Virus record (IMG/VR): IMGVR_UViG_3300048571_000088
Coordinates: 62,001 to 126,000 of that record
Direction: 5' to 3' (one strand)
DNA: 64,000 nucleotides
Shown here: piece by piece, positions 595 through 50,683 of the stretch
How positions within the stretch are numbered: the first letter of the stretch is position 1
How the letters are laid out: each line of letters starts with the position of its first letter
Notes under the pieces: generated by a model
The model's input: only the letters and a program-made list of their open reading frames with translations
What the model was told of the DNA's origin: nothing
The model's database searches: none
Position numbers and translations under genes: made by a program

Positions 595-669
595 GCACCA
601 GTTGCAAGAATCGAACTTGCTATCTCTTCACAATTTTCTTGTGAGTGCTCTACCTTGAGCTACCTGATG
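595..669 (-). tRNA. tRNA-like / degenerate tRNA with an aberrant anticodon arm
   Basis: Minus strand shows a canonical D-arm (TAGCTCAAGGTAGAGC) and T-arm (GCAAG-TTCGATT-CTTGC). The anticodon arm TCACAA-GAAAA-TTGTGA is non-canonical, the acceptor stem is imperfect and there is no CCA. Confidence 0.55.
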
Positions 670-20803: not shown

Positions 20804-22121
20804 TTATTTAGATATTTCGTATTTATCTTCTAGCCAATTTTTTAAAAAGGTTCTCATTCTTTTGGAAGGTATATACAGATTAATCTCTTCATTGTTTCTT
20901 ATTGCTGATCTCCAAATAAACTGTACCATCTCAGATATAGCATATACATCTTCTTTAACACTAAAGCCCCTAGCTGATGAGGCTTTAACTAATTCAGGAT
21001 TAGGGTAAAGATTAAGAAGGTAAGCTACTGTATGTCGATCTCCATAGTTATTAGTAGCTTTAGTATTCATTGGTAACCATTCATTTGAATAATTGTTGAC
21101 ACCGTTCTTCTGTACTCTTGTTTTACAATCTTTAAAACAAGTCCAGAGTAAATCTGATTTTTTACATTTGGCTTTATTTCTAATGTAATTGTCTAAGTTA
21201 GCAGAAAGTGTGTCTTTGACTGCTGTTTGTTTGCAGTTAGTAGAAGATAAAGCAGATTCTTTACTGCCTGTTTCATTTAATTTCCCTCTTAAAGTGTCTT
21301 CGTAGACATTAATTAGATGTTTTATTTCTGAAGGTTTTTTACCAAATCTGATAACTTCATAATCTAAGCCATGAGCTTTTAAGTAAGTAGCCATGATATT
21401 ATCTTCGAACATGTATGTGGCAATCCATACTTCTTTAAAAGCTTTTAAAGCATTAATTGCAAGTTCCCATATCACTACTTTTCCGTCTATCAGCATTAAC
21501 TGCCCTAAGTCACACAAAGTAGCAAATGTTTCGTAATAAGTATCTTTAGTAGTATCTCTTCCGTTAGAAGTGTCTCCATAATTTTCTCTGTGAAATTTAA
21601 GAGTAATCCCGTCTGTTTCTTCTAGTGTGATCCAACCATTATCAAACATAGCTTTTATTTCTTTCTCATTGTAGACATCATAGATCTCATACACACTTAA
21701 CATCTCATCAATTACTAAGATATAATCTCTAGCCTGCTTAAGTATTTCTGGTGTTAAGTTAACAAAGAGTTGATGAGTACTTACTATGTTATCATTATTC
21801 TTTAATAACTGAGGAAGAGATTCAGCCTTACCTCCTTTATTCGAGAAATAAGGATGTTTGAACACTCTATCTTTAAGAGGAGTTTCTTCTGCTTCGTTAT
21901 ATTGGTACAGTAAAGAAGAATCATCACTCTCTACAATGATCGGCCTTTTATATAAGTCTTCAGGATCATACACTGTTCCTGCAATTCTGTGACACTCTGT
22001 GAGTAGTGGTGTTATAAATATGTACTTTTGAGACATGTCAGAGTTTTTAATATTTTCAATAACCTTAGTTGTTTTGCCTGACCCGCATCATTGCATCGTA
22101 CACTTTAATGTTTGTTTTCAT
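20804..22121 (-). pseudogene. SF2 helicase-like / origin-binding protein, +1 frameshift at 22085 inside Walker A
   Basis: ATG 22121 with SD gives MKTNIKVYDAMM-(extra C)-GSGKTT, then LVIDE (Walker B) and EMVQFIWRSAIR; paralog of 23251..24576. Confidence 0.8.
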
Positions 22122-23250: not shown

Positions 23251-24576
23251 ATGACTAAAATTACAGTAATAGATGCAATAATGGGAGCAGGAAAGAGTTC
23301 TTATATTACCCATCTTATTCATAAAGCACCACATGATCAATCTTTTCTTTACATCACTCCGTTACTAAGTGAATGTCACAGGGTAGCTTGTACTACTTCA
23401 ACAAGATCTAAAGGAGAACCACCAAAGAGAGATTCTAATAATAATATTATCTATACAGAAACTACTAATCCTAATGCAGTAGATATAAGATATAGAAAGT
23501 TTAAACACCCTGAAGTGAAGAGTAGTGGAGGTAAGATTGATAGTTTAAAATATCTAGTTGAGCATAAGCATAATATTACTTCTACCCACTCATTACTCCT
23601 AAGACTAGAAGCGCAAAAAACAGAGTTATTTAATCTTAAAGATTATATATTGATAGTAGATGAAGCTTTAAATGCTTACTCTGAATATGATCAACTCAGT
23701 GCTTATACTGTTAAGCAACAGATTAAGAATGGATTATTTAGTATAGATCCAGATGGGTTTACACTTTTATTTCATCCAGAAGTTATAGGTACAACAGGGA
23801 GTATAGAAGGTTTAACTCAGTTAGAAGAGTATGCTGAACTTTGTAACAGGAGAGTATTACTTTTTGTGGGAGGTAAGATTATAGTTTGGGAGTTAAGTCC
23901 TGATTTATTAAACTCATTTAAAGAGGTGTGGTTTTGCACGTACCAATATAAAGGTACAGTATTGGATACTTATTTAATATCCAATGGATTTCAAGTACAG
24001 ATTACAACAATACCTACTAATAAGAAACCTTCTGACTATAAGCCTCTTATTACTATTATTGAAGAAGATAAACTGAATGCTATAGGCGCAGAAAAATACT
24101 CTTTAAGCTACACTGCTATGGAAGAGGTAGAAACTTTAGAAGTACTCAGAAAGAATTTGATGAATTTTTTTATCACTAAATGCTGTAACGCTACAGCGAA
24201 AGATCGTATCTGGACTTCCTATAAAGAGAAAAGAGATGTTAATAATAGAATTATTATTGTTAATAAAGTTATAGCAGGCAAAAATTACTTTAAACAATGG
24301 TTACCATTTAATACTAAAGCAACTAATGAATATTCTAATTGTCACAACGTAGCTTACCTTTGTAATATATTTCTTAATGTAGATATTAAGACTGTTGCTA
24401 GTAAGAAAGGTCATCCAGTTGATGAAGACATGCATGCGTTAAACGAGATGATCCAGTTTATCTGGAGATCTGCAATTAGAAACCAAGAACCAATTAATTT
24501 ATATATACCTTCTGCAAGAATGAGAAATCTCTTCAAGAGTTGGTTAAATGATGAGTACGAAATTAAGGAACTCTAA
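23251..24576 (+). CDS. SF2 helicase-like / origin-binding protein
   Basis: DAIMGAGKS Walker A, LIVDE Walker B, EMIQFIWRSAIR motif VI-like. Confidence 0.85.
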   Translation: MTKITVIDAIMGAGKSSYITHLIHKAPHDQSFLYITPLLSECHRVACTTSTRSKGEPPKRDSNNNIIYTETTNPNAVDIRYRKFKHPEVKSSGGKIDSLKYLVEHKHNITSTHSLLLRLEAQKTELFNLKDYILIVDEALNAYSEYDQLSAYTVKQQIKNGLFSIDPDGFTLLFHPEVIGTTGSIEGLTQLEEYAELCNRRVLLFVGGKIIVWELSPDLLNSFKEVWFCTYQYKGTVLDTYLISNGFQVQITTIPTNKKPSDYKPLITIIEEDKLNAIGAEKYSLSYTAMEEVETLEVLRKNLMNFFITKCCNATAKDRIWTSYKEKRDVNNRIIIVNKVIAGKNYFKQWLPFNTKATNEYSNCHNVAYLCNIFLNVDIKTVASKKGHPVDEDMHALNEMIQFIWRSAIRNQEPINLYIPSARMRNLFKSWLNDEYEIKEL

Positions 24577-39796: not shown

Positions 39797-40012
39797 CTAT
39801 TCGCCTGCGTACTCTGCTTCCTCAAGTACGAGGAAGACAATCTGGACGAGGCCTAGAGCCTTATCATGCTGCTCCAGACGATATTCCACATCCTCTGGGA
39901 TCTTCCCGAGGATGGTGTCATCCCCGATGTAGAAGCAATCAGAAGCAGGGATAACAACACCTGCTTCTGCCAGTTGGGTACGGATCGCTGCAGCATTGGT
40001 TTGCGCGTTCAT
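39797..40012 (-). CDS. hypothetical acidic early protein
   Basis: AGGAG SD, own leader. Confidence 0.65.
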   Translation of the reverse strand: MNAQTNAAAIRTQLAEAGVVIPASDCFYIGDDTILGKIPEDVEYRLEQHDKALGLVQIVFLVLEEAEYAGE

Positions 40013-40174
40013 GTATTTTCTCCTAATAGATGGGCATGACCCCAGGAAGGTTTGAGAGTTTCAACTGCTCTCACAGACTCTATATTATTTAGTGTGCATT
40101 AAGAGTTCGCACAGACTACAAGAGTTAGGTACACTCAATATCACGTACCTTCGTCCTGTAGGACTTTCTGTCTA

Positions 40175-40513
40175 TCAGCAGTTGTACTCAACCCAGGCTT
40201 GGCTGTACGCAGCTTGTCGTGCGTCGTGCCACTCTTTCAAGTTCACCAATTTCCCCGTCAAACCACCCCGGAAGGTGTCAGAGGTGATCTGAACTTCCAG
40301 TGGCGAATCCGCCGGTGTCTTGAATGTCACAAACCCACAGTTGTACATCTCGGACACCGAGTCCAGCAAGTCGCGGTCTGACTTGCTAACAGCTACGGTA
40401 ACGGGGCGGCCATTGAAGGCCAACTTCATTGAAGAAGTTATTTCGACCACGTCCCCAACTCTCTGAGTTGTATTCTTGTACATGATGTATTCTCCTTGAT
40501 TGATGGGCAGCAC
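40175..40513 (-). CDS. hypothetical protein, paralog of 38398..38733
   Basis: Shared motifs; likely start MYKNT. Confidence 0.75.
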   Translation of the reverse strand: MLPINQGEYIMYKNTTQRVGDVVEITSSMKLAFNGRPVTVAVSKSDRDLLDSVSEMYNCGFVTFKTPADSPLEVQITSDTFRGGLTGKLVNLKEWHDARQAAYSQAWVEYNC

Positions 40514-40595
40514 CCCAAGCTTAAAACTTCTTTACATATAAAACCCATAAGAGAGTCTCATATGTAAAGAAGGGGCGCAGGAGCACCCCAACTTT

Positions 40596-40808
40596 TTAAC
40601 ACACCTTCAATTCGTCCCCACAGTCAATACAAGCATAATACTCGTATTGATTTGTCATCCGGGAGAAGACACAGACGTGTCCGCAATGACAACGGAAGAA
40701 GTTACCCTCTTCGTTGATCTCTGCTACGGTCTGCACCTCTCCTTCGAGCTTTGCAGGTATTTTGGTGTACATGACGTTAGCCATATAGTAAAGTAACTCC
40801 ATTAACAA
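40596..40808 (-). CDS. small Zn-finger protein
   Basis: CHCGH...CIDCG. Confidence 0.6.
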   Translation of the reverse strand: MLMELLYYMANVMYTKIPAKLEGEVQTVAEINEEGNFFRCHCGHVCVFSRMTNQYEYYACIDCGDELKVC

Positions 40809-40840
40809 TGTGAGAAATTAAAAAGGTTTCTCACTTACCT

Positions 40841-41092
40841 TTAAACAATCTCAGTGAATGACTTTTCAGTCGTATCATAAGAGAATGTCTTAATACCTTG
40901 ATGACGGAGTGTCTGTAGTGCCTCATCAGCAGTACCAGCACTCATTACCACATTTTTCACCCCGAAGGATGAAATCTCTTCGGCGAACTTAATCGCTGCT
41001 TCAGAAGAATCAAGACGAACTTGATCCATCGAGACCACTTCCACCTCTACAGCAGAAGAAATTTCAACACCAAGAAAAACATAGATCTTCAT
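40841..41092 (-). CDS. hypothetical protein
   Basis: 83-aa ORF. Confidence 0.6.
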   Translation of the reverse strand: MKIYVFLGVEISSAVEVEVVSMDQVRLDSSEAAIKFAEEISSFGVKNVVMSAGTADEALQTLRHQGIKTFSYDTTEKSFTEIV

Positions 41093-41103
41093 AATGACCC
41101 CCC

Positions 41104-41460
41104 TTAGTACTGATAAGCAGTGAGTCGGAGCAGATCTTCAACCACTTCAGAATCAATTACATCTGAAGGGAGAAAACATACATCCCACCCTTGTACACCT
41201 ACAATCTCCCCGTACTTAATATGTAACAGGGAAACATAGGCTCCGTAATTACGAGCAAACTCTTTCTTCTCAGCTACAGAGAGGTCAGAGTAGTACTCAA
41301 AGGTCATAGCATGAAGCCATTGACCTTCTGCTACAGAATTACCTACTGTAGCATCTGGAGTCTTAGAGAAACGAACAACGTAAACATCGTTCAATTTCTC
41401 ACCAACACCCCAAGGATGTCCTATTGCGGAGTCCATCCAGTCATGGTCATGAGCGTACAT
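41104..41460 (-). CDS. hypothetical protein
   Basis: 118-aa ORF, GGAG SD. Confidence 0.65.
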   Translation of the reverse strand: MYAHDHDWMDSAIGHPWGVGEKLNDVYVVRFSKTPDATVGNSVAEGQWLHAMTFEYYSDLSVAEKKEFARNYGAYVSLLHIKYGEIVGVQGWDVCFLPSDVIDSEVVEDLLRLTAYQY

Positions 41461-41556
41461 AACAGTACTCCGACAAAAAGAATCAAACTTATAAGTACTA
41501 ACCAGGAATACTTATAAGTTTGATTGAGGGTTTCTTATAACCCTCAAAATACCAGC

Positions 41557-41808
41557 TTAGCTATGATTAGGGTGTATAGCGGTTGATCCGTCAGTGGCAG
41601 TCACTTGTACGTACCACGAGCGAGGACAATCCTCTGCATCTGCCATCACTTCGTAAGGCACGGCAATCGCCTCGCATGTGTCGACGAACATGGATTGATG
41701 AATGACGGCGGCATCCTTGTAGTCGCCGTCGAATCCCATGAAGTACTCATCATGGTACTTCTGCGCCTCTACTTCTATTTTCGAGACCAACTGCTCTGCC
41801 ATGTTCAT
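41557..41808 (-). CDS. hypothetical acidic protein
   Basis: 83-aa ORF, GGAG SD. Confidence 0.65.
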   Translation of the reverse strand: MNMAEQLVSKIEVEAQKYHDEYFMGFDGDYKDAAVIHQSMFVDTCEAIAVPYEVMADAEDCPRSWYVQVTATDGSTAIHPNHS

Positions 41809-42127
41809 ACTACATCTCCAAGACCAAAGAAAGGTGGTCAGCCTGTAATACTTCTTTATAGTTTATATCCATAGAAGAATACAATCTATAAAGAAACATG
41901 AGGTGAGAGAAACTGATCAAAAAGTAACCAGTTCTCTCACCTCCTCCTTAGATTCATCCTACCAACATCCAGTAGAACAAACCTAAAAATAATAAGAAAA
42001 TAATAAGAACAGATAACCATCCATTATTACTTTCTATCTTATCCTGATAATTCTTCATAAGAACACCTAAGATTAAGAAAGAGACTAATACATTTAATTA
42101 TACAGGCTGTATTCCCACCTGTAACCC

Positions 42128-42523
42128 TTACTTTACTGACATCAAGTACTCAATAACGTCAGCGAGGAGTTGTGGGTGCTCCTCAAGTTTGATCATACGG
42201 TGTCCGTACTCAACGAAGTCTTCCAACTTCAAAGATACGAGTGCAGCAGCACGCTCAACAATACCTTCATAGGAATTGCTGTCCACGACGTCTCCGTGGA
42301 AGTAGACTGCCATCGCAACGATAGCAAATTCTACTTCCATCTCTGCATGTACAGCAGAACTGCACCCATGTACCAGACGGTCAGACTGCACGTACACATT
42401 AAGCATACGTGCAGAAGTCCCAAATCCGTATACGAATTTATCATATACGGCAATTGGGGTATCCCCTACTACAGGGGCGTACGGGTCGTTGGTGACCCCA
42501 GCCATGTATCCCATATTGGACAC
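42128..42523 (-). CDS. hypothetical acidic protein
   Basis: 131-aa ORF, AAGGAG SD. Confidence 0.7.
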   Translation of the reverse strand: MSNMGYMAGVTNDPYAPVVGDTPIAVYDKFVYGFGTSARMLNVYVQSDRLVHGCSSAVHAEMEVEFAIVAMAVYFHGDVVDSNSYEGIVERAAALVSLKLEDFVEYGHRMIKLEEHPQLLADVIEYLMSVK

Positions 42524-42650
42524 TCCTTAACTCTGTGTGAGATTCAAAGGTTCTCACACTCTACCTTATTACATACTCTATATGTACTAAACACTAATAC
42601 ACATAAGTATATAAGATCAGTTTATACACTTGATCAGGTGTTGATCTGTT

Positions 42651-43331
42651 TCAGGAATGATCCCAAAACAGATCTGCGAACCACTCGGCAGTTGCTTGGA
42701 AGCTGCCATCTTCCTTACATCCGGCAATGTCTGCGCGGATGGCAGCTTCGGCTGCTTTGTTCCGGCCGACAACTCGCTGCCCTTTACGAGCAGCCATGTA
42801 GCTAGTGACAGCCGCAGGGACTGTCCATCCAGCTTTCTTATCTTCCCACTCGCACAGGAAGAGCTTGTAGCCTTCTTCGCGAGCAGCAGTTTCCACCCCC
42901 TCTGCTACTACAGGGGATGATGAAGGGATCACCACTTCTTGGTGATCTTTTCCTGCTGCCATTGCTTCGAATTTCTCGACAATGGCAAAGAATGCCTTCC
43001 GAGACACAGCAATTTCAGTCGTGTCATACTTGGACTCGCTAGTGCAAGCCCATAAGGTGAATCCGACTTTCCAGCCTGTGTCGGATTGATCACAAGGGAC
43101 ACTGATTTGCATCCCCTGTGCGAAGGTGAATGGTGCATTGTGATCAACAATGCGCACCTTGTTGCCCAGCATCTCTGCTGGCGTCAAGGCCATTACAGCC
43201 TCATTTGTTGCCAACACGGCAACAAGTTTGGCAGCTTTTTTGGCCGCCAGTTCGTCTTCGGTCGGCGGAGCAACATAGCTCTCATCCGCCACCCGACAAC
43301 CATAACGGTCATCGTACTGAAAATATGCCAT
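42651..43331 (-). CDS. hypothetical early protein
   Basis: 226-aa ORF, GGAGAATACATTATG leader. Confidence 0.7.
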   Translation of the reverse strand: MAYFQYDDRYGCRVADESYVAPPTEDELAAKKAAKLVAVLATNEAVMALTPAEMLGNKVRIVDHNAPFTFAQGMQISVPCDQSDTGWKVGFTLWACTSESKYDTTEIAVSRKAFFAIVEKFEAMAAGKDHQEVVIPSSSPVVAEGVETAAREEGYKLFLCEWEDKKAGWTVPAAVTSYMAARKGQRVVGRNKAAEAAIRADIAGCKEDGSFQATAEWFADLFWDHS

Positions 43332-43482
43332 AATGTATTCTCCAAAACTTGTGTGAGATTAATGAGGGTTCTCACACTTAACCCTAAACAAATATATAAA
43401 TACCAGTAAGTACCTGATACTCATATATTTATTAACTCTAATTAGAAGGATAGAGTTAATCCTTTGTTCAAGTGTACCGAGC

Positions 43483-43857
43483 TTATACAGCCCAGTACAT
43501 ACCAACGTGTTTAAAGACCGAAGTCTTACGCACACCTCCATTACCATCAGGCACGTCAACTGACACTCGGTCAGTGCAAGCGTACCCAACCCGATATCCA
43601 GCAGCTTGCAAAACTTCTTGCAGAACTGGCATGAAACTTGGCATGCCTCCGATCATAACGTGCCCACAGTCAATCCGCGCATCTTTCACAAGCCCAAGAA
43701 CCCGCTTAGCACGGGAGACAAGCTCCTCGTGGTCATAAATCGCAGGGAAGGTGATTGCCGCAACAAGCGCAGCTTTCAAATCACCTTGAAGATCGATGAC
43801 ACCAGACGCCAGTTGATCTTCAGTCGCGGCGTGTTGAGTCAGATTCAAAATGTTCAT
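43483..43857 (-). CDS. Csx20-like small Rossmann-fold protein, putative cyclic-oligoadenylate ring nuclease
   Basis: LNLTQH, ITFPAI, VMIGG, GY.V.YACTDR and KTSVFKH match the Csx20 pattern as recalled (N.TNH, PFP.V, V...GE, GI.V.AAC.ER, K...F.F). Confidence 0.6.
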   Translation of the reverse strand: MNILNLTQHAATEDQLASGVIDLQGDLKAALVAAITFPAIYDHEELVSRAKRVLGLVKDARIDCGHVMIGGMPSFMPVLQEVLQAAGYRVGYACTDRVSVDVPDGNGGVRKTSVFKHVGMYWAV

Positions 43858-43985
43858 AATGTATTCTCCATAATGACGGGCATCACCCCGAGTACTTTTA
43901 GATGAGGGAGTAATAAAACCCTCTAGGAATTATTCCACATATAGGTACTAGATTTCTCCAATACCTATAAATTGAATAATTAAGC

Positions 43986-44501
43986 TCATTGAGTAATAAA
44001 GGAGAGCTTTACACCTTCAGATGACGTCTCGCTTAAAGAAGATAAAGCATCAAAGCAAGCCTTAGCTTTACTCTTATACTTTAAAGCTTCTTTCTCAGGA
44101 TCAAGTCCAAGTATGGTACGAGTAAACTCAGCACCATACTCAGTAATCCGAGAATTATCAAGAGCATCATATGCTTTAACCAACAAAGCAATACGATTAC
44201 CACTTGATAACAAGCGATTCAATGCAGTCTCAGAAGTTTCACCTTCCATCTTAGTAACAAGACGTAAAGCTTCCTTCCCTTCATCTGTACTCAAGAACTT
44301 ATAACAGTCCTCAAATACATATGAAGTATCCTCGACTACATCATGAAGAACAGCTACAACTAGTGAATCACCAGTGTAACCATCCTTCCTCATCAGACCA
44401 TACACCCTAAGAGGATGATTGATGTATGGTTCTTCATCTCCTCTTCTCATCTGACCTTCATGTGCCAGACGAGAAAAAGAGATAACTTCTTGTATTCCCA
44501 T
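43986..44501 (-). CDS. HD-domain (p)ppGpp hydrolase-like protein (small alarmone hydrolase / Mesh1-like)
   Basis: AHEGQ.R...PYINHP...AVLHDVVEDT...LVKAYDALDN. Confidence 0.9.
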   Translation of the reverse strand: MGIQEVISFSRLAHEGQMRRGDEEPYINHPLRVYGLMRKDGYTGDSLVVAVLHDVVEDTSYVFEDCYKFLSTDEGKEALRLVTKMEGETSETALNRLLSSGNRIALLVKAYDALDNSRITEYGAEFTRTILGLDPEKEALKYKSKAKACFDALSSLSETSSEGVKLSFITQ

Positions 44502-44545
44502 AGTACCTCCAAGGGATAAACAAGAAACTCGAACATTTAATTACC

Positions 44546-44568
44546 CAGAGGCTGTTCAACCACCTCTG
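44546..44568 (-). terminator. hairpin between the SAS-like and SAH-like genes
   Basis: CAGAGG-11 nt-CCTCTG. Confidence 0.4.
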
Positions 44569-44584
44569 TCAGATTCAGACACTA

Positions 44585-45136
44585 CTAACTACGTTTCCAC
44601 GCATCAGTGTAAATCTGAATCTGACGACGAACAAGGCGTTCCATTGCCTTAAATTCGTCGGAGTCAAGCTCATCAGCATACAAATGAGCTTGAGCCACGA
44701 GGGAACGCTGTCCCTCGTACAACCGATGTCCATAATCCTTGGCCTGGATCATGGCAACGGTATTGATTTGCAGCTCGCAGATCATACCGTCAATCGTGAC
44801 ATATACCAAAATGTCACGGTACATCGGAGCAGGGACATTCACCCCTGCTCGGAGCCAGTTTCTCTTAACCGTAACTGGTAAAACGGTGGTGATTGCAGCC
44901 AGCACTTCCTGTGCTTCTGCCGCTGTGGTTACCACTAGGGTTCCACGAACAGCATCTTTCAGGCGACTGCAATCACCTTTGTAGTCCGCCAGAACCTTTT
45001 CCATGGCTCTGGCGTAGCTTTTGATCGGTGCCAACATAACATCAGCACCAATCTGCCCGGCAACCTTGGTGACCACGGAGTCAAACTCCGCTTTAACCTT
45101 AGCTGCCGAAGCTAGCAAATCAATCAGTTCTTGCAT
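44585..45136 (-). CDS. RelA/SpoT-type nucleotidyltransferase (small alarmone synthetase-like)
   Basis: PIKS..RA.EK, KDAVRG, YRD and CELQINT...GH.LYE correspond to the SYN motifs. Confidence 0.8.
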   Translation of the reverse strand: MQELIDLLASAAKVKAEFDSVVTKVAGQIGADVMLAPIKSYARAMEKVLADYKGDCSRLKDAVRGTLVVTTAAEAQEVLAAITTVLPVTVKRNWLRAGVNVPAPMYRDILVYVTIDGMICELQINTVAMIQAKDYGHRLYEGQRSLVAQAHLYADELDSDEFKAMERLVRRQIQIYTDAWKRS

Positions 45137-45209
45137 AGAACCTCCTGATCAATTGTATGTGAGATTTACAAAAGGTTCTCACACATAACCTAATTTCTTA
45201 CTTTTATAA

Positions 45210-45296
45210 TCACCCAAAAAGGATAAGTATAAAAGTAAGAAAAGACAGTTTACTGACATGTCTAGGTCGTATGGCTCTGCGTTTACGACGTTTCAT
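45210..45296 (-). CDS. 28-aa basic-then-hydrophobic micropeptide
   Basis: MKRRKRRAIRPRHVSKLSFLTFILILFG with AGGAG SD; degenerate copy at 38061-38107. Confidence 0.4.
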   Translation of the reverse strand: MKRRKRRAIRPRHVSKLSFLTFILILFG

Positions 45297-45549
45297 GAGA
45301 AACTCCTGCAGAGGGATAGAGTGTTTAATAAGGTACACTCTAATGAGACCTAATTACTTTAATATTTAATGAGGTAAAGTAAGAAAACCTCAAGAAATCA
45401 ATTCTGCTCTGCATCTAGCGCGGTGAGCACCAGAACATGAAGCAGAATTGAAATCAAAACATAAGCGAGAACGCCCATATTAAAAACTCCAAAACAACAA
45501 TAAGGTTCTCTACTTAAAAAGGTGAGAGAACACAACCTACGTCTCAAGC

Positions 45550-45753
45550 TTAACGACCAAGAATCTCGTTAAGCTTGAGACGGCAACGATTTGCCTTACG
45601 ATGAAGACGGTCACGATCTTCATCGTCTTCCTGGGAGTTGCAATCCCAAGAGTCTTCCCATCCGTGGGAAGAGGTAGTTTCGAGATCCTCGCGAACCTCG
45701 TGGATCTGTCTTACCAACAGATCCGAATACTCTAGGCGAGTCACGGAAGACAC
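45550..45753 (-). CDS. hypothetical acidic/basic small protein
   Basis: 67-aa ORF. Confidence 0.55.
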   Translation of the reverse strand: MSSVTRLEYSDLLVRQIHEVREDLETTSSHGWEDSWDCNSQEDDEDRDRLHRKANRCRLKLNEILGR

Positions 45754-46147
45754 TCCATAAGAAGGTAAGCGGAGATTATGGCTTCCGCTTGTAGCCGTCA
45801 GAGAGCATTTGACTCCAGTAGGTAAAAGAACCTACAAAGAGAAAATGCCTCCAAGAGGATAAACCTCAAAAGAACCATAAGGCTCTTTCGGAGTCAACCC
45901 TCAAGAAGGGCATGATGGTCGCGCCAAACCCAGACCACCCCAAGTGAGGAATCGGAGGCGCGACCGCGAGCGCACGAGCACAATATGACACTAAGCCATA
46001 AGACGGTCGAGGCACGGAGTCACCAGTCCACATTTGTCTGGTGTATAGCGAGTAGCGAGCGGAGTAAGTGTTTTCTTTAACTACAACCCAACTCAGTACT
46101 TGTTCTTTTGGCTGCCATCTTCAGTACTAGGGAACCACCACTAGTAG

Positions 46148-46167
46148 ACTGCCCCTCCCAGGGCAGT
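46148..46167 (-). terminator. GC hairpin after RNAP2
   Basis: ACTGCCC-ctccca-GGGCAGT. Confidence 0.5.
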
Positions 46168-46178
46168 TTCGGCTTGTA

Positions 46179-49100
46179 TTAAGGTTTAATTGCTACCGCT
46201 GCATTCAAGAGATACGCTTGAATGCTTTGGTTAACAACTACCTCAGGTCTTGACATCAGCTCAGTCACGTCACCGATCTTCGATACCTTATTCAGGTTAC
46301 CAAAGACCAGCTCCATGGCATCTACGTTGACTTTTGCATCATGCCCAACAGCAGCAAGTGCATGTACCATCAACGTAAGGATGATGATGTCCATCCCTTT
46401 GGCAGAAACGTTATACTCTTTCTGCAATTCCGCCGAGTAGAACATCTTCTCGAACGAAATCTGATAAGCTTCGCGCAAGCTTACAACTTCTGCTACCTTT
46501 TCAGATAACATTTTAGCTTGACGTTGCTTAATTACAGTGAGTAACGCTCCTGCATTATTGGCAAGGAGTTCCTCGGAATCCCATGCATACATTTGTACCC
46601 AAGCTTTCGCTTCAGCTTCAGTATACACAGGGGCGATACGGGCACAACTTTGGGGTGACATTACCTTCGCCAACATCTTGGCTGCCATCTCCCCAATTGC
46701 CCGTTTGATTCGATCCATCGAATCGCTTTGGGTTGCTCCACCCTGCAGATTTACCAGTGAGCGTACAACAGCCTTCACTAGTTTATCATACACATGTGCC
46801 ATACCAGCCACATTCTTACGGATACCTACCCGCATCAGCATAGTTGCTGGCAGATAGGAACCCGAAAGGAGCACCTCTTTTACAACTTTACGTGCCAAGT
46901 CCTCACGGCTCTGCGTCAATTGTTGCGCATGGGTGAAGAGTCCGACGTTACCACGTGCCAGACCAGCCTTTACAACAGCCTTGGTGATGTCTTCCCATGT
47001 ATGCAACACATGGGTAACCACTTTCGGCACCAATGGTGTCCACAAACCTTCCAATTCCGCTTTCACGAAATCAATGGTAGCTTGAGCCACTGGGTTGACA
47101 CTTTCGTCCAACGGTGCATCTTGTTGAACGACCTTACCAAGCCCATCCTTCAGAATAGACTTGTTTGGAACAAGGTAGACGCTACCTGTGTCCCCGTCAC
47201 CGTCATCCTGCCCATGCAATACGAACATTGCATTGTGCAGTTGTGCAGTACCCATCAAGATTGCATCTAAAGAAGACTGAACCTTGTTTCGCACTACCCA
47301 CACACGGCGAACAGCATTGGCCATGATGGTTGGAGGCTTGGCGAACACCGCACCAACACCTGAAGAGTAGCTCTTGCAGGCGCTGTGGTACTGCTCATCA
47401 AGCACAGGAGATGCAACTTCACCGTACCCGAGACTCCACGACGAGACGATCAGACCCGTCGACCCGTGGGCATGAACCTGCCCAAGTTGCTTGCCAAGAA
47501 CACTGTTCCGACATTCCAAGATACTCTCTTTCAAGATACCCCAGACTGTCTCTGTTCTTCCTGAAGCGTCGATAGTGGTAGTGTACCACACCGCCTCAAG
47601 TATGGCAGCAAGCAGACCTTGCGTTTTGATCAGAGTGCCTTTGTTGGACACACTGACCAGTTTTTCCAATACCTTGGTACCAGGGAAGATCATCTCAGTC
47701 CCGTCTGGGAACTGAAGATTTGCCCACTCGGCATCACCAAGTTGGAACAACTGCGCAATGACAATCTCGCCATGCAGGGTCATTCCATGGTCACGCTCCA
47801 ACCAGTTCTTTTCCTTACGAACTTCGTGAAGCGTGTTTACCATATCTTCCATATTAACATCGAAGATGTCTTTACGGTCGATGGTGCCCGGGTGTAGCAA
47901 CTTGAAAGCCAGTTGCAGTTGCTCAACATCAGCTCCTGCTTTCTCACCTTCAAGTACAGCATTTACAAATGCTTCAGCTTGGTCAGTACCATAGTTGGAG
48001 CTGATAGACTGAAGCATTTGTACGTTAGTTTTGACGCTAACGTTTTTACGACGGATTTCTCCGGCTCCAACTAACTCTAGCAGGCTTTCTGCTAGAGTTA
48101 TTCCTCTTTGCTGCGACAACGCAAAGGCTCGTTTTGTAACCGAACCCTTGTTTGCAAGGCCAGTGCAACGATGCACAGCAACTTGACAGAACGACTCAAA
48201 CCCTACCGATTCTTCTGGTACGAGTTCGAACACTGCGCAAGCTGCTGACTCAGTGATGCGGTAATCAGCATCACGTACTATCGCAACAGAGATAACATCT
48301 CCATTGGTCAGTGTTGCATCTTGCCACGGAAGGCTGGCTTTTGACGCAGCAGCTTTCACCGCTGTGTACGGCAGAATGACAATGTTAGTGTCACACTCCA
48401 TCGTCAACAACTCAGCCACCACATCAGCTTCGCGGATCAATGGATCAACCACATCTTCCACGTAGGCTAGACCAACCTTCTGACCCAGCACAGCAAACCC
48501 AACACAGCGAACTGCACCGAATTGATGCCAAGCGTGGGTGTTGAAGCCACCTGAGCCGATTGCACCACTAGCTTCAACCGCCTTGACGGTCTCTGCTTGG
48601 TACTGGCCTCGCTTGGTGCTATCTAAAGCGTACACCACCGTTGTAGCAGTGAACGGGATAGTACCATCATCCGTCGTGCCTTTCACTTGCTTCGATAGAC
48701 GAGCAATCAGTTTTTCAACCGACTCTGCCGAAACAATCCCATCTGCATCTGGTGCTGCGAATACGTTCGCTTTCCGGATATACGAATCCAGTTTTTGAAC
48801 GTACCCATGCTTTTCATGATTTTCAGCATGAAGGCTTGCACCGAAGCCTTTCTTACTGAGAGTCTCTGTTACAGCAGACTCTCCTTCATTCCAGATACCT
48901 TTCAGGACAGTTCCTGTTGGGCCATCTAGAACAACACACATGGCAGGATTAGCTCTTAATCCTGCCAGTTCCACACCGGCCTTATGCGCTAACAGAGCGT
49001 CAATAACGACTCCATTTTTGCTAGGCTGTGCGTTTTTGTCCAGCACAATGATCTGCTCTTTTTCAGCGATCAGGATAAGTTTGGTCATCTTTTCGACAGG

Positions 49101-49613
49101 CAAGATGACCCCAGCCTTCTTGCTATCCTTCCTTACGACCCGCAGATTGAATCCGTTAGGATGCCCGATGTGGAAGTCCCAGACAGACTTGTGTTGCTCA
49201 AGCCCTGCTTCTGGTTGGAGCAACTGCATAGCAGCAAGGAGGATCTGTGGCAACGCTGTTTCCAGCTCTAACGGCAACCCCAAAGCTAGCGACTCACCAG
49301 CTTTCACTGATTCCCATGCCTGTCTCAGAGGTGTCTTGATGTAACGTTTCTCTCCTTTTAGTCCAAGAGTTGTTGCACGATCTTGGAGCAGACTACGAAC
49401 CCGGATACGACAGGCATTCCGAAGCGATACAACTTGCTCCGATTGCGTACCCAGGTTCTGGGTGGTTGTGACCAACTCAGCCAGGTTATGGCAATGAGTG
49501 ATCAATGATACCAAAGCCCGGTTACGGTCTTCTGCCGCTGTATCGTGAGACGTTGTCTCATCGATGTAAGCGACCAGAGCCTCGAGGGTCTTGATGTTGG
49601 TGTTAGTAGTCAT
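46179..49613 (-). CDS. single-chain two-barrel RNA polymerase-like protein (RNAP2)
   Basis: Beta-like GQKVG / IVILPYTAVKA / DYRITE, then beta'-like FAKPP and HGQDDGDGD (DxDGD, about 47190-47216); collinear with 13696..17184. Confidence 0.75.
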   Translation of the reverse strand: MTTNTNIKTLEALVAYIDETTSHDTAAEDRNRALVSLITHCHNLAELVTTTQNLGTQSEQVVSLRNACRIRVRSLLQDRATTLGLKGEKRYIKTPLRQAWESVKAGESLALGLPLELETALPQILLAAMQLLQPEAGLEQHKSVWDFHIGHPNGFNLRVVRKDSKKAGVILPVEKMTKLILIAEKEQIIVLDKNAQPSKNGVVIDALLAHKAGVELAGLRANPAMCVVLDGPTGTVLKGIWNEGESAVTETLSKKGFGASLHAENHEKHGYVQKLDSYIRKANVFAAPDADGIVSAESVEKLIARLSKQVKGTTDDGTIPFTATTVVYALDSTKRGQYQAETVKAVEASGAIGSGGFNTHAWHQFGAVRCVGFAVLGQKVGLAYVEDVVDPLIREADVVAELLTMECDTNIVILPYTAVKAAASKASLPWQDATLTNGDVISVAIVRDADYRITESAACAVFELVPEESVGFESFCQVAVHRCTGLANKGSVTKRAFALSQQRGITLAESLLELVGAGEIRRKNVSVKTNVQMLQSISSNYGTDQAEAFVNAVLEGEKAGADVEQLQLAFKLLHPGTIDRKDIFDVNMEDMVNTLHEVRKEKNWLERDHGMTLHGEIVIAQLFQLGDAEWANLQFPDGTEMIFPGTKVLEKLVSVSNKGTLIKTQGLLAAILEAVWYTTTIDASGRTETVWGILKESILECRNSVLGKQLGQVHAHGSTGLIVSSWSLGYGEVASPVLDEQYHSACKSYSSGVGAVFAKPPTIMANAVRRVWVVRNKVQSSLDAILMGTAQLHNAMFVLHGQDDGDGDTGSVYLVPNKSILKDGLGKVVQQDAPLDESVNPVAQATIDFVKAELEGLWTPLVPKVVTHVLHTWEDITKAVVKAGLARGNVGLFTHAQQLTQSREDLARKVVKEVLLSGSYLPATMLMRVGIRKNVAGMAHVYDKLVKAVVRSLVNLQGGATQSDSMDRIKRAIGEMAAKMLAKVMSPQSCARIAPVYTEAEAKAWVQMYAWDSEELLANNAGALLTVIKQRQAKMLSEKVAEVVSLREAYQISFEKMFYSAELQKEYNVSAKGMDIIILTLMVHALAAVGHDAKVNVDAMELVFGNLNKVSKIGDVTELMSRPEVVVNQSIQAYLLNAAVAIKP

Positions 49614-49656
49614 ATTGATATAACTAATTCTAACTGGTTTCTAACTACGACCAAGC

Positions 49657-50124
49657 TTACGCTTGAGCCGTCGCAACCAGTTTTGCTGCTTTGCGAGCAG
49701 CGTGACGTGCACGGCGATCCGCTACACGAGCGGTCTTCCCTGTTACACGGACAACTGCTGTTGCAGGGAGGGTTGCAGCAGGAGCGGTCTTTGGAGCAGC
49801 TTTCGCCACTCCTTTCCCGGCCAGGAGCATCAGCCGCAGGGATGTTCTCCCTGCGACATAACTAGCCTGAACATTGGCACGACGGCGTGCCTCTTTGGCT
49901 AGCCGACCTTGCCGAGCTGTTTCCAGCTCTTGTTTCGTGGCAAGGTGAGCACGAAGCTCTGCTTTGGCCTCGGCCAAAGCCAACGCGTTGGAGGCACGGG
50001 TTTCAACCCAACGGCTCACGCCGTAGCCAGGCTTCACGTTCAAGGAGGCAACGCGTGCCTCCAGGGTCGAGATTTGTGTCTCACGGCTTACGCCGTGAGC
50101 TGGCCGTGATTTGATTGCCTTCAT
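49657..50124 (-). CDS. Ala/Arg/Lys-rich basic protein (histone-like, putative nucleic-acid binding)
   Basis: Composition; AGGAG SD; directly upstream of RNAP2. Confidence 0.7.
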   Translation of the reverse strand: MKAIKSRPAHGVSRETQISTLEARVASLNVKPGYGVSRWVETRASNALALAEAKAELRAHLATKQELETARQGRLAKEARRRANVQASYVAGRTSLRLMLLAGKGVAKAAPKTAPAATLPATAVVRVTGKTARVADRRARHAARKAAKLVATAQA

Positions 50125-50144: not shown

Positions 50145-50683
50145 AGGCTCATTACACCTACTCTGCCTAGTACAGAGAAAAGAGGGAATAACTAGAATGT
50201 ACAGCAGGGTACTTAAACCCATGTAGACCTGTGCTACATACACACCTTTCTTTTATTAAATAGTGAGTAAAGGATCTCACTAGCTGTTTCGTCCTTTTGG
50301 ACTCATCAGTGTTACCTCACAGTAACAGACAGCAGCACACTATATTTTATATCCTGTGTGCTATAGGATAAGACAATGGAACGCTCAGCTCTTACAGAAC
50401 GTTCCACATACGCCGCAACTGCACCACCATGTTGAACTCAACCTGGCTCAAGCCTGGGAAAGTTGCACCGTCGCCCAGGCGTACAACTTCCACGACGGTG
50501 CAACCACATGGCACGAATGCCATGTCTGCGACTTCCAGGACAACGAACCCTTGCTTATCCAGCATATTCATACGATCCATGATATTCTCCTTAAAGACAG
50601 GCTCATTACACCTGTTGGTATATGTACAAGGGCTAACCTATATACATATACCATTACTGCCTAGTACAGTAGATAATAACTAG
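50145..50683 (-). promoter_or_regulatory. duplicated upstream element before the two terminal minus-strand genes
   Basis: AGGCTCATTACACCT at 50145 and 50599; CTGCCTAGTACAG at 50163 and 50657; AATAACTAG at 50187 and 50675. Confidence 0.65.
50392..50580 (-). CDS. hypothetical small protein
   Basis: AAGGAG SD; preceded by the duplicated element. Confidence 0.55.
   Translation of the reverse strand: MDRMNMLDKQGFVVLEVADMAFVPCGCTVVEVVRLGDGATFPGLSQVEFNMVVQLRRMWNVL

What the first reader, a model, noticed from the sequence alone, without database searches (positions are those of the whole stretch)
43483..43857. Csx20-like putative ring nuclease in the pre-early region: candidate type III anti-CRISPR
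The motif series LNLTQH / EDQ / ITFPAI / VMIGG / LQAAGYRVGYACTDR / KTSVFKH parallels the CRISPR-associated Csx20 family as I recall it; that family is linked to cyclic-oligoadenylate degradation. The classic viral ring nuclease is AcrIII-1 (DUF1874), a different family. A Csx20-type gene with its own leader among the first-expressed genes would be a distinct anti-type-III strategy.
Basis: inference. Interest (0 to 1): 0.75.

Follow-up and report, generated by a model that had tools for sequence, protein, structure and literature searches.

The report
Phage Csx20-like candidate ring nuclease
A 242-kb freshwater phage carries a small gene related to Csx20, a bacterial enzyme that destroys the cyclic-oligoadenylate alarm signal of type III CRISPR, so it probably disarms that defence; the idea has been proposed for phage csx20 genes but never tested on a phage copy.

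Summary
The ORF (window 43483-43857, minus strand, 124 aa) and all quoted motifs are real, and the gene is under strong purifying selection. NCBIfam and PADLOC Csx20 models give weak collinear hits, 84 of 89 homologs hit Csx20 on their own, and profile-profile comparison with bona fide Csx20 gives 97.3% probability. Precomputed Pfam places it in PF27247 (MJ1673). It fails the NCBIfam Csx20 cutoff (19 vs 70 bits) and belongs to a separate, largely viral clade. That clade also includes copies embedded in type III CRISPR loci and the Pasteurella prophage csx20 gene of a published acr operon. The fold is confident (pLDDT 97) and Rossmann/CARF-like. A homodimer is supported (0.83 vs control 0.17) and echoed by natural tandem fusions. 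His9, Gln15, Arg97 and His117 are essentially invariant and shared with Csx20. Most likely it is a dimeric cA4 ring nuclease used as a type III anti-CRISPR. The "pre-early" and "own leader" claims are not supported: it is the third gene of a unit after a Tas1-like alarmone synthetase and an HD hydrolase. Phage csx20 as counter-defence is already in the literature, so this is a new member of a known kind.

The parts
43483..43857 (-). Csx20-like (Pfam MJ1673 family) gene, 124 aa; candidate homodimeric cOA ring nuclease
   Evidence: ORF; Csx20 HMM hits; hhalign to bona fide Csx20 97.3%; pLDDT 97; dimer 0.83 vs control 0.17; dN/dS ~0.04
43855..43869 (-). SD-spacer-ATG cassette GGAGAATACATTATG (translation initiation region of the gene)
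   Evidence: Exact copy also at 43329-43343, in front of the next gene; a one-mismatch copy at 40481-40495; 3 matches vs 0.27 expected
43431..43460 (-). 10-bp stem hairpin about 20 nt after the stop codon, followed by an A/T-rich stretch; possible end of the transcription unit (inferred)
   Evidence: RNA fold of 43340-43482(-): z = -4.6. The simple terminator scan did not call it
43986..44501 (-). HD-domain SpoT/Mesh1-type alarmone hydrolase, 171 aa; second gene of the unit
   Evidence: Pfam HD_4 29.8 bits, phrog_990 E=2.9e-24; PDB sequence hits to RelA/SpoT hydrolase domains, (p)ppApp hydrolase 7smg and Mesh1
44585..45136 (-). Tas1-like RelA/SpoT-homologue nucleotide pyrophosphokinase, 183 aa; first gene of the unit
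   Evidence: PDB 6ox6 Tas1 E=6.5e-10; weak Pfam RelA_SpoT E=0.02; 70% identical ortholog in the same order in L180
45158..45184 (-). Conserved inverted repeat/hairpin GTGTGAGAAC-N-ATCTCACA heading the three-gene unit, about 20 nt upstream of the RelA-like start
   Evidence: 3 exact-pattern copies in the window vs 0 expected; only 4 arm-pattern copies in the whole genome, all within 102.8-107.2 kb; alignment A3
43352..43377 (-). Next copy of the same hairpin, heading the following gene (42651-43331); marks the downstream boundary of the unit

Best explanation
The gene encodes a small homodimeric CARF-like protein of the Csx20/MJ1673 superfamily. The phage most likely uses it as a stand-alone ring nuclease. 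Two subunits would build a composite pocket across the dimer axis from the loop after strand 1 (N5-T7-Q8-H9) and the Gly-rich loop after strand 4 (G70-G71-P73), together with R97, K111 and H117. This pocket would bind the cyclic oligoadenylate (most likely cA4) made by the host's Cas10 when type III CRISPR recognises phage RNA. The enzyme would cleave it without metal to linear products, so CARF/SAVED effectors are never switched on. Shown here: homology to Csx20, a confident fold, a supported dimer, conserved polar residues, purifying selection, orphan status in a phage with no cas genes, and clade-mates inside type III loci and in a published acr operon. Inferred: ligand identity, catalysis rather than mere binding, and the in-vivo anti-CRISPR effect.
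Confidence: 0.58

Rival explanations
1. It is a cOA sponge rather than an enzyme: the dimer binds cA4 (or another cOA) tightly and sequesters it with little or no cleavage, as described for Csx15.
For: Same fold class and dimer evidence as the main explanation. Csx15, a relative of Csx16/Csx20, is a good cA4 sponge and a very slow nuclease (PMC13148439). Nothing here distinguishes binding from cleavage.
Against: The residues shared with the enzymatically active Csx20 (His, Arg, His, Thr, Gln) are near-invariant in this clade. The Csx15 authors argue that sponging is a poor strategy against the large cOA amounts made by type III systems, and Csx15 was not found in phages.
Confidence: 0.12
2. 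It degrades or binds a different cyclic-nucleotide signal (for example cA3 or cA6, or a CBASS, Pycsar or Thoeris-type messenger), so its target is not, or not only, cA4-dependent type III CRISPR.
For: Csx20 itself degrades cA3 at high enzyme concentration. The clade is very divergent from Csx20. The CRISPR-linked members sit next to Csm6-family (Cas_NE0113) CARF genes, a family in which some members use cA6. Many cellular hosts of the family (18 CPR genomes) show no Cas10. SAVED domains from CBASS are among the structural neighbours.
Against: The only direct genomic associations found are with type III loci and with an anti-CRISPR operon. No CBASS or Thoeris neighbourhood was seen. cA4 is the predominant type III messenger, and all CARF-type stand-alone ring nucleases assayed are cA4-specific (PMC12409355).
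Confidence: 0.13
3. It belongs functionally to the upstream alarmone module, for example by binding or hydrolysing (p)ppApp/(p)ppGpp or regulating the Tas1-like synthetase, and has nothing to do with cOA.
For: It is the third gene after a Tas1-like RSH and an HD alarmone hydrolase, behind one shared hairpin module. The order is kept in the closest relative L180, and a wastewater relative keeps both the RelA-like and Csx20-like genes.
Against: None of 143 other loci carrying the family has a RelA-like or HD homolog nearby, with a working positive control. Relatives at 61-64% identity lack both. In L180 a second HD paralog lies elsewhere, and two small ORFs separate HD from the Csx20-like gene. 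The family's only recurrent functional associations are type III CRISPR and an acr operon.
Confidence: 0.07
4. It is a generic Rossmann-like small enzyme (the top structural hit is the C-terminal domain of aspartate/glutamate racemases), and the Csx20 similarity carries no functional meaning.
Confidence: 0.04

Closest known systems
Csx20 (NCBIfam NF040559; CRISPR-associated cA4 ring nuclease; Hoikkala et al. 2025, PMC12409355)
   Same: Same length (~124 aa). Full-length profile homology (97.3%). Shared H..T..Q, Gly-loop, Y-x-x-(S/T)-x-R and F-K/R-H motifs. Predicted dimer. Same Pfam family (MJ1673) by precomputed annotation.
   Different: Scores 19 bits vs the 70-bit cutoff. Separate clade on a very long branch. 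Gly-loop is MIGGxP rather than QGDFGAT. Encoded by a phage with no cas genes. The two clades can coexist in one genome (G001). Activity untested.
Prophage/phage csx20 homologs in Aca14 (RHH)-regulated acr operons of Pasteurella multocida (PMC13551039)
   Same: Same clade: the Pm86 copy scores 80 bits with this clade's profile vs 24 with bona fide Csx20. Mobile-element encoded, and proposed as a co-opted cas gene for counter-defence.
   Different: No RHH/Aca14-like gene next to the window's gene or in 143 other loci by phmmer. Here the partners are an alarmone synthetase/hydrolase pair, and the candidate operator is a different inverted repeat.
AcrIII-1 / Crn2 (DUF1874, Pfam PF08960 STIV_B116-like)
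   Same: Same proposed job: a small viral homodimeric, metal-independent cA4 ring nuclease that pre-empts type III signalling.
   Different: Unrelated family. No PF08960 match in this genome.
Crn1 (Sso2081) and CARF-domain sensors (Csx1/Csm6, Can2, Cam1, Card1) and SAVED domains
Csx15 (CARF-type cA4 sponge / slow nuclease) and Crn4b (phage/plasmid-borne broad ring nuclease)
   Same: Small dimeric cOA-binding proteins. Crn4b is likewise found on phages and proposed as an Acr. Catalysis centres on conserved Thr/His/Arg.
   Different: Csx15 was not seen in phages and acts mainly by sequestration. Crn4 has an unrelated novel fold.

Membership tests
Csx20 sensu stricto (NCBIfam NF040559 equivalog) | Whole-protein score at or above the curated cutoff (70 bits) | tested here: not met
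   19.1 bits, E=1.3e-3; 18 bits in six-frame search. Bona fide Csx20 score 142-171 bits.
Csx20 sensu stricto (NCBIfam NF040559 equivalog) | Gene located in or next to a type III CRISPR-cas locus | tested here: not met
   Phage genome with no Cas10 palm or RAMP match. However, about 6 clade-mates in cellular genomes are embedded in type III loci.
Csx20/MJ1673 superfamily (Pfam PF27247) | Significant match to the family model / homology to bona fide members over the whole domain | tested here: met
   Precomputed PF27247 hit for the identical protein P0001 and all close homologs. The model is absent from the local Pfam copy, so it was not re-scored. Independent tests: hhalign 97.3%, E=1.8e-11, columns 10-123 vs 6-122; 84 of 89 homologs hit NF040559; PADLOC Csx20 E=1.6e-3.
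Csx20/MJ1673 superfamily (Pfam PF27247) | Conserved polar residues proposed for cOA binding/catalysis (His, Arg, Thr/Ser, Gln) | tested here: met
   H9, T12, Q15, Y92, T95, R97 and H117 align with invariant or near-invariant H7, T10, Q13, Y93, T96, R98 and H118 of Csx20. They are 88-89 of 89 conserved in the clade, apart from T12 (81 T + 6 S), Y92 (73 Y + 15 F) and position 95 (all S or T).
Ring nuclease (functional class) | Homodimer forming one cOA site on the two-fold axis | tested here: inconclusive
   The dimer prediction passes its controls (0.83 vs 0.17), and tandem-fused homologs exist. No ligand could be modelled and no coordinates were available to map the pocket.
Ring nuclease (functional class) | Cleavage of cyclic oligoadenylate to linear products | not testable with these tools
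   Biochemical assay needed. Shown only for a CRISPR-associated Csx20 (PMC12409355).
CARF superfamily fold | Rossmann-like beta-alpha-beta core with significant structural similarity to solved CARF domains | tested here: inconclusive
AcrIII-1 / Crn2 (DUF1874) | Match to PF08960 (STIV_B116-like) | tested here: not met
   No Pfam hit for the protein, and no PF08960 match anywhere in the genome.
Anti-CRISPR (type III) | Inhibits CRISPR immunity in vivo; typically in an Aca-regulated operon | not testable with these tools
   A clade-mate in Pm86 lies in the published csx20-aca14 operon. No Aca-like gene was identified beside the window's gene. A conserved inverted repeat heads the unit, but its binder is unknown.

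The most novel reading that the evidence does not exclude
The MJ1673/Csx20-like clade could be a predominantly viral ring-nuclease lineage, far more widespread in uncultured phages than the four phage genomes reported, and possibly rivalling AcrIII-1. From it, cellular type III systems may have repeatedly borrowed copies. In this phage lineage it would also be wired into a single hairpin-controlled 'nucleotide-messenger warfare' cassette together with a Tas1-like (p)ppApp synthetase and its hydrolase, coupling takeover of host adenine-nucleotide pools with destruction of the host's cOA alarm.
Probability: 0.15. Interest if true: 0.7.

Novelty: new member of a known kind. Interest (0 to 1): 0.45.

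Why it matters
Type III CRISPR is hard for phages to escape by point mutation, and destroying its second messenger is one of the few general counter-measures. Only AcrIII-1 and a viral SAVED protein have been shown experimentally to do this. Crn4b and Csx20 homologs on phages are proposals. This gene is a clean, confidently folded, strongly conserved phage representative of a large and mostly viral branch of the Csx20 superfamily: 1432 cluster representatives and at least 185 viral contigs. A single cA4-cleavage and plasmid-challenge experiment would establish whether this whole branch is a second major family of viral ring nucleases. It would also help annotation, because the family is currently labelled 'hypothetical' or 'MJ1673' and falls below the Csx20 cutoff used by NCBI. 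The finding itself is incremental, since the concept is already published.

Tried and rejected
- Local Pfam and PHROGs gave no hit for the protein. PF27247 is not in the local Pfam library.
- PDB sequence searches with the protein and with the family profile found nothing.
- Foldseek against the PDB gave no significant match.
The direct model-to-Csx20 structural comparison is therefore missing.
- Source names for homologs were all 'hypothetical'.
- Megablast and tblastn of neighbouring genes found no close cultured phage.
- Fusion partners: no Pfam domain in 10 long homologs. The 410-aa extension of P0059 has no Atlas or PDB match.
- Nucleus-forming jumbo phage idea: no msRNAP beta, tubulin or phiKZ chimallin match. 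Rejected on present evidence, though this is a weak negative.
- Sigma-70 promoter scan found none upstream of the gene, and site counts were at or below shuffled expectation.
- An apparent AT-rich promoter-like element shared by the hairpin-bearing leaders does not recur convincingly genome-wide, so no promoter consensus is claimed.
- RNA evidence: no RNA run holds this DNA. Laying a freshwater metatranscriptome at 80% likeness gave short contigs of a relative over neighbouring genes but none over this ORF, so there is no expression evidence either way.
- The gene's high GC is not specific to it; the whole ~10-kb region is GC-rich.
- One search used a wrong accession (PF09002 is Card1_endonuc); it was repeated correctly as PF08960.
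- jackhmmer returned nothing without a control; the test was repeated with phmmer and a positive control.
- The supplement of PMC12409355 is not held, so the published phage Csx20 hits could not be compared.

Full report
**1. The observation**

Window 43483-43857 holds a 124-aa ATG-to-stop ORF on the minus strand. A GGAG Shine-Dalgarno lies 8 nt before the ATG. The gene is real:
- An exhaustive HMMER search finds 1432 cluster representatives at E<=1e-3.
- The closest relative (88% amino-acid identity, 76% nucleotide identity) gives dN/dS of about 0.04. dS is saturated, so the value is approximate.
- AlphaFold2 with an 89-sequence alignment gives mean pLDDT 97.1.

**2. The genome**

The window is bases 62001-126000 of a 242,588-bp virus record that CheckV rates 100% complete.
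- GC content is 33.3%.
- A 132-bp terminal overlap shows the assembly is circularly closed.
- The DNA recurs in at least 24 freshwater metagenome samples.
- It has no close relative among 50,697 deposited phages.
- I found no phiKZ-type multisubunit RNA polymerase, tubulin or chimallin, so nothing suggests a nucleus-forming phage.
- The genome has no Cas10 palm or RAMP domain and no AcrIII-1/DUF1874 gene.

**3. Is it Csx20-like?**

Yes at superfamily level, no in the strict sense.
- NCBIfam CAS_Csx20 matches residues 47-118 to model positions 48-119 of 124, at E=1.3e-3. The score is only 19 bits against a 70-bit cutoff.
- PADLOC's independent Csx20 model gives E=1.6e-3.
- Of 89 diverse homologs (alignment A1), 84 hit Csx20 on their own, best 1.6e-13.
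- I collected 28 bona fide Csx20 genes (142-171 bits) from one bacterial class and aligned 20 of them (A2). Profile-profile comparison of A1 with A2 gives 97.3% probability, E=1.8e-11, over columns 10-123 vs 6-122.
- The aligned conserved residues are H9/H7, T12/T10, Q15/Q13, G71/G72, Y92/Y93, T95/T96, R97/R98 and F115-x-H117/F116-x-H118.
- In the window's clade, T7, H9, Q15, G19 and G71 are invariant. N5, R97, K111, F115, H117 and G119 are 88 of 89.
- The precomputed Pfam label of the identical protein and its relatives is PF27247, named MJ1673. ESM Atlas places it among MJ1673 clusters that are 50-82% viral.
[quoted passage not shown] M. jannaschii was the control genome scoring above the Csx20 cutoff.

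**4. Two clades**

A maximum-likelihood tree of 139 sequences separates bona fide Csx20 (100/100 support) from the window's family by a very long branch.
- One Thermoanaerobacter genome has both: a 157-bit Csx20 next to a Cas10-like gene, and a 36-bit member of the window's clade on another contig.
- Within the window's clade, 70 viral, 52 other cellular and 6 CRISPR-linked sequences are interleaved.
- The window's protein groups with a viral contig and a small Neisseriaceae-binned contig.
- Caveat: my bona fide Csx20 sample comes from a single class, so intermediate forms may exist.

**5. Fold and oligomer**

The model is a beta-alpha-beta core (strands 3-5, 20-22, 66-69; helices 13-17, 25-34, 43-60, 76-85) followed by a long beta-hairpin (89-103, 109-122).
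- Foldseek against the PDB finds nothing significant. Its weak hits include cA4-bound Cam1, Sso2081/Crn1 and Csm6.
- About 17 of the top 50 hits from 48,161 chains are CARF or SAVED sensors or ring nucleases. These include SAVED-CHAT, Cap5, VC1899, Cap14, Csx1-Crn2, Cam1, TIR-SAVED, a viral SAVED ring nuclease, Csm6', Can2, a CARF deaminase and Cami1. I read this as consistent with a CARF-like fold, not as proof.
- A homodimer is supported: ipSAE 0.83 in three runs against a best control of 0.17. In calibration this mark was reached by 20 of 30 solved homodimers and 1 of 23 monomers. Because my own alignment was used, these counts hold only roughly.
- The interface contains the conserved loops 69-77 and 91-96 and the C-terminal strand.
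- Independently, many homologs are tandem duplications of the whole domain in one chain. This is the arrangement expected if the functional unit is a dimer.

**6. Genomic associations of the family**

There is no conserved neighbour.
- Clustering 793 neighbours from 143 loci gives a largest cluster covering 7 loci.
- A PHROG tally of 150 viral neighbours gives no family more than three times.

The family is much more visible in viral data than in cellular genomes:
- At least 185 confirmed loci in IMG/VR, against 64 in one genome for each of 185,579 species.
- Many of the cellular copies lie in prophage or mobile contexts, for example an SU10-type portal and terminase in L125 and a Mu transposase in L089.

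A minority are embedded in type III CRISPR loci:
- In Akkermansia (L136, L143, L144) the gene sits between a Csm6-family CARF gene (Cas_NE0113) and cas10/cmr2-cmr3-cmr4-cmr6.
- In Hyphomicrobiaceae (L129, L131) it forms a pair with a Csm6-family gene, divergent from a Cas10-palm/RAMP/RAMP operon.
- In a Synergistaceae MAG the domain is the C-terminus of a WYL-WCX protein on the same contig as Cas10.
- All of these score 120-146 bits with this clade's profile and at most 13 with bona fide Csx20.

Pasteurella phage Pm86 carries a (truncated) clade member, 80 vs 24 bits. It is immediately followed by a 71-aa ORF that looks RHH-like by eye. This matches the csx20-aca14 anti-CRISPR operon characterised in P. 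multocida (PMC13551039).

**7. Local organisation**

- The gene lies at genome position 105,483-105,857. That is about 6 kb from the head of a ~110-kb leftward gene array, which diverges from the rightward structural block at about 112-113.5 kb. This is compatible with early expression but is not evidence for it.
- No sigma-70-like promoter lies in the 128-bp spacer upstream.
- The 'leader' is an exact 15-nt SD-to-ATG cassette shared with the next gene.
- A conserved inverted repeat, GTGTGAGAAC-N-ATCTCACA, occurs four times in the whole genome, all within 4.5 kb. It sits about 20 nt upstream of the starts of the RelA-like gene, the 226-aa gene and the 131-aa gene, but not of the Csx20-like gene.
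- A strong hairpin follows the Csx20-like stop codon.
- I therefore infer a three-gene unit:
  - a Tas1-like RelA/SpoT homologue (183 aa; PDB 6ox6 E=6.5e-10);
  - an HD alarmone hydrolase (171 aa; HD_4, and similar to (p)ppApp hydrolase and Mesh1);
  - the Csx20-like gene.
- The order is kept in the closest relative (L180). A wastewater relative also keeps the RelA-like and Csx20-like genes.
- Relatives at 61-64% identity lack both partners. None of 143 other loci has them, with a working positive control. The linkage is lineage-specific.
- No RNA data cover the gene.

**8. Mechanism**

The best-supported reading is a stand-alone, metal-independent homodimeric ring nuclease.
- The loops after strand 1 (N5, T7, Q8, H9) and strand 4 (G70, G71, P73), with R97, K111 and H117, would form a composite site on the two-fold axis. 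This is inferred from the CARF paradigm and the interface list.
- The site would bind cA4 made by host Cas10 and linearise it. This would prevent activation of CARF/SAVED effectors.
- Csx20 has this activity in vitro (PMC12409355).
- Because the phage has no type III machinery of its own, the cellular 'off-switch' role does not apply. Counter-defence is the natural role, as proposed for phage csx20, Crn4b and AcrIII-1.
- Confidence is about 0.58. Rivals are a sponge (0.12), another cyclic-nucleotide substrate (0.13), an alarmone-linked role (0.07) and an unrelated Rossmann enzyme (0.04).

**9. Novelty**

- Csx20 as a ring nuclease, its presence in four phage genomes, and phage csx20 in acr operons as a co-opted cas gene are all published (PMC12409355, PMC13551039).
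- This gene is a new, well-behaved member of that kind.
- What goes beyond the literature I could read:
  - the phage copies form a large, mostly viral clade that is distinct from canonical Csx20 and falls below its annotation cutoff;
  - CRISPR-embedded copies nest inside that clade;
  - tandem-fused and effector-extended forms exist.
- None of this is experimentally tested.

Noticed in passing
window 46106-46174 (-): Full-length type II hammerhead ribozyme (Rfam RF02276, 56.2 bits vs gathering 37, E=6.6e-9) with an intact GAAAC / GUC / CUGANGA core. It lies 5 nt after the stop of the 1144-aa ORF, so it could cleave the leftward transcript between that ORF and the downstream small genes.
   Followed up: partly
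window 50281-50335 (-): Type III hammerhead-like match (RF00008, 43.8 bits, just under gathering 48.5, E=5.8e-7) upstream of the 155-aa and 1144-aa ORFs. Together with the type II copy, it would bracket that two-gene segment.
   Followed up: no
window 43986-45136 (-): A Tas1-like RelA/SpoT-homologue synthetase (183 aa; PDB 6ox6 E=6.5e-10) directly followed by an HD SpoT/Mesh1/(p)ppApp-hydrolase-like gene (171 aa). This is an alarmone synthetase-hydrolase pair resembling toxSAS-SAH modules, carried by a phage. The closest relative L180 has a second HD paralog.
   Followed up: partly
window 40810-40834, 42536-42559, 43352-43377, 45158-45184 (-): An inverted repeat/hairpin with arms GTGAGAA/TTCTCAC occurs only four times in the 242-kb genome, all within 4.5 kb. 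Three copies lie about 20 nt upstream of a start codon. It is a candidate operator or 5'-UTR element of a small local regulon; its binder is unknown.
   Followed up: partly
window ~40000-50000 (genome 102-112 kb): A GC-rich island (44-53% GC per kb, against 33.3% for the genome and about 29% in the flanks) holding the 1144-aa ORF, the alarmone pair and the Csx20-like gene. This suggests a different origin or different constraints for the whole block.
   Followed up: partly
P0058, P0060, P0063, P0068, P0069, P0105, P0167; P0056, P0059, P0131, P0079: Homologs with two complete Csx20-like domains in tandem. Some have an added 180-410-aa C-terminal extension with no Pfam, PDB or Atlas match. These may be sensor-effector proteins built on a pseudo-dimeric Csx20-like module.
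   Followed up: partly
L101:6645-8387 (+): A 580-aa WYL-WCX-Csx20-like fusion in a Synergistaceae type III CRISPR locus (Cas10 about 13 kb away, RAMP nearby). It is a candidate cOA-responsive transcription regulator.
   Followed up: partly
L136:6856-13970; L143:2321-10315; L131:1386-9659; L129:1923-8378: Type III loci in Akkermansia and Hyphomicrobiaceae in which a member of this clade, not canonical Csx20, is paired with a Csm6-family (Cas_NE0113) CARF gene. The published survey reported no known ring nuclease beside Csm6-type effectors.
   Followed up: partly
window 42651-43331 and 43890-44238 vs runs X26/X27: A wastewater relative (~85% nucleotide identity) keeps the Csx20-like and RelA-like genes. 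It replaces the 226-aa gene by 214 nt and the HD region by about 1.2 kb, so this is a mosaic hot spot.
   Followed up: no
window 20804-22036 (-) and 23251-24576 (+): Two divergent paralogs of phrog_2467 (410 and 441 aa), a family of unknown function spread across Bacillus, Acinetobacter, Vibrio and other phages. In some records it is annotated as homing endonuclease or helicase.
   Followed up: no
window 595-668 (-): ARAGORN reports a tRNA-Phe with the unusual anticodon AAA.
   Followed up: no
genome ends (G000 1-132 and 242457-242588): A 132-bp, 99% identical direct overlap of the two record ends shows the assembly is circularly closed, although the record is classed as linear.
   Followed up: yes
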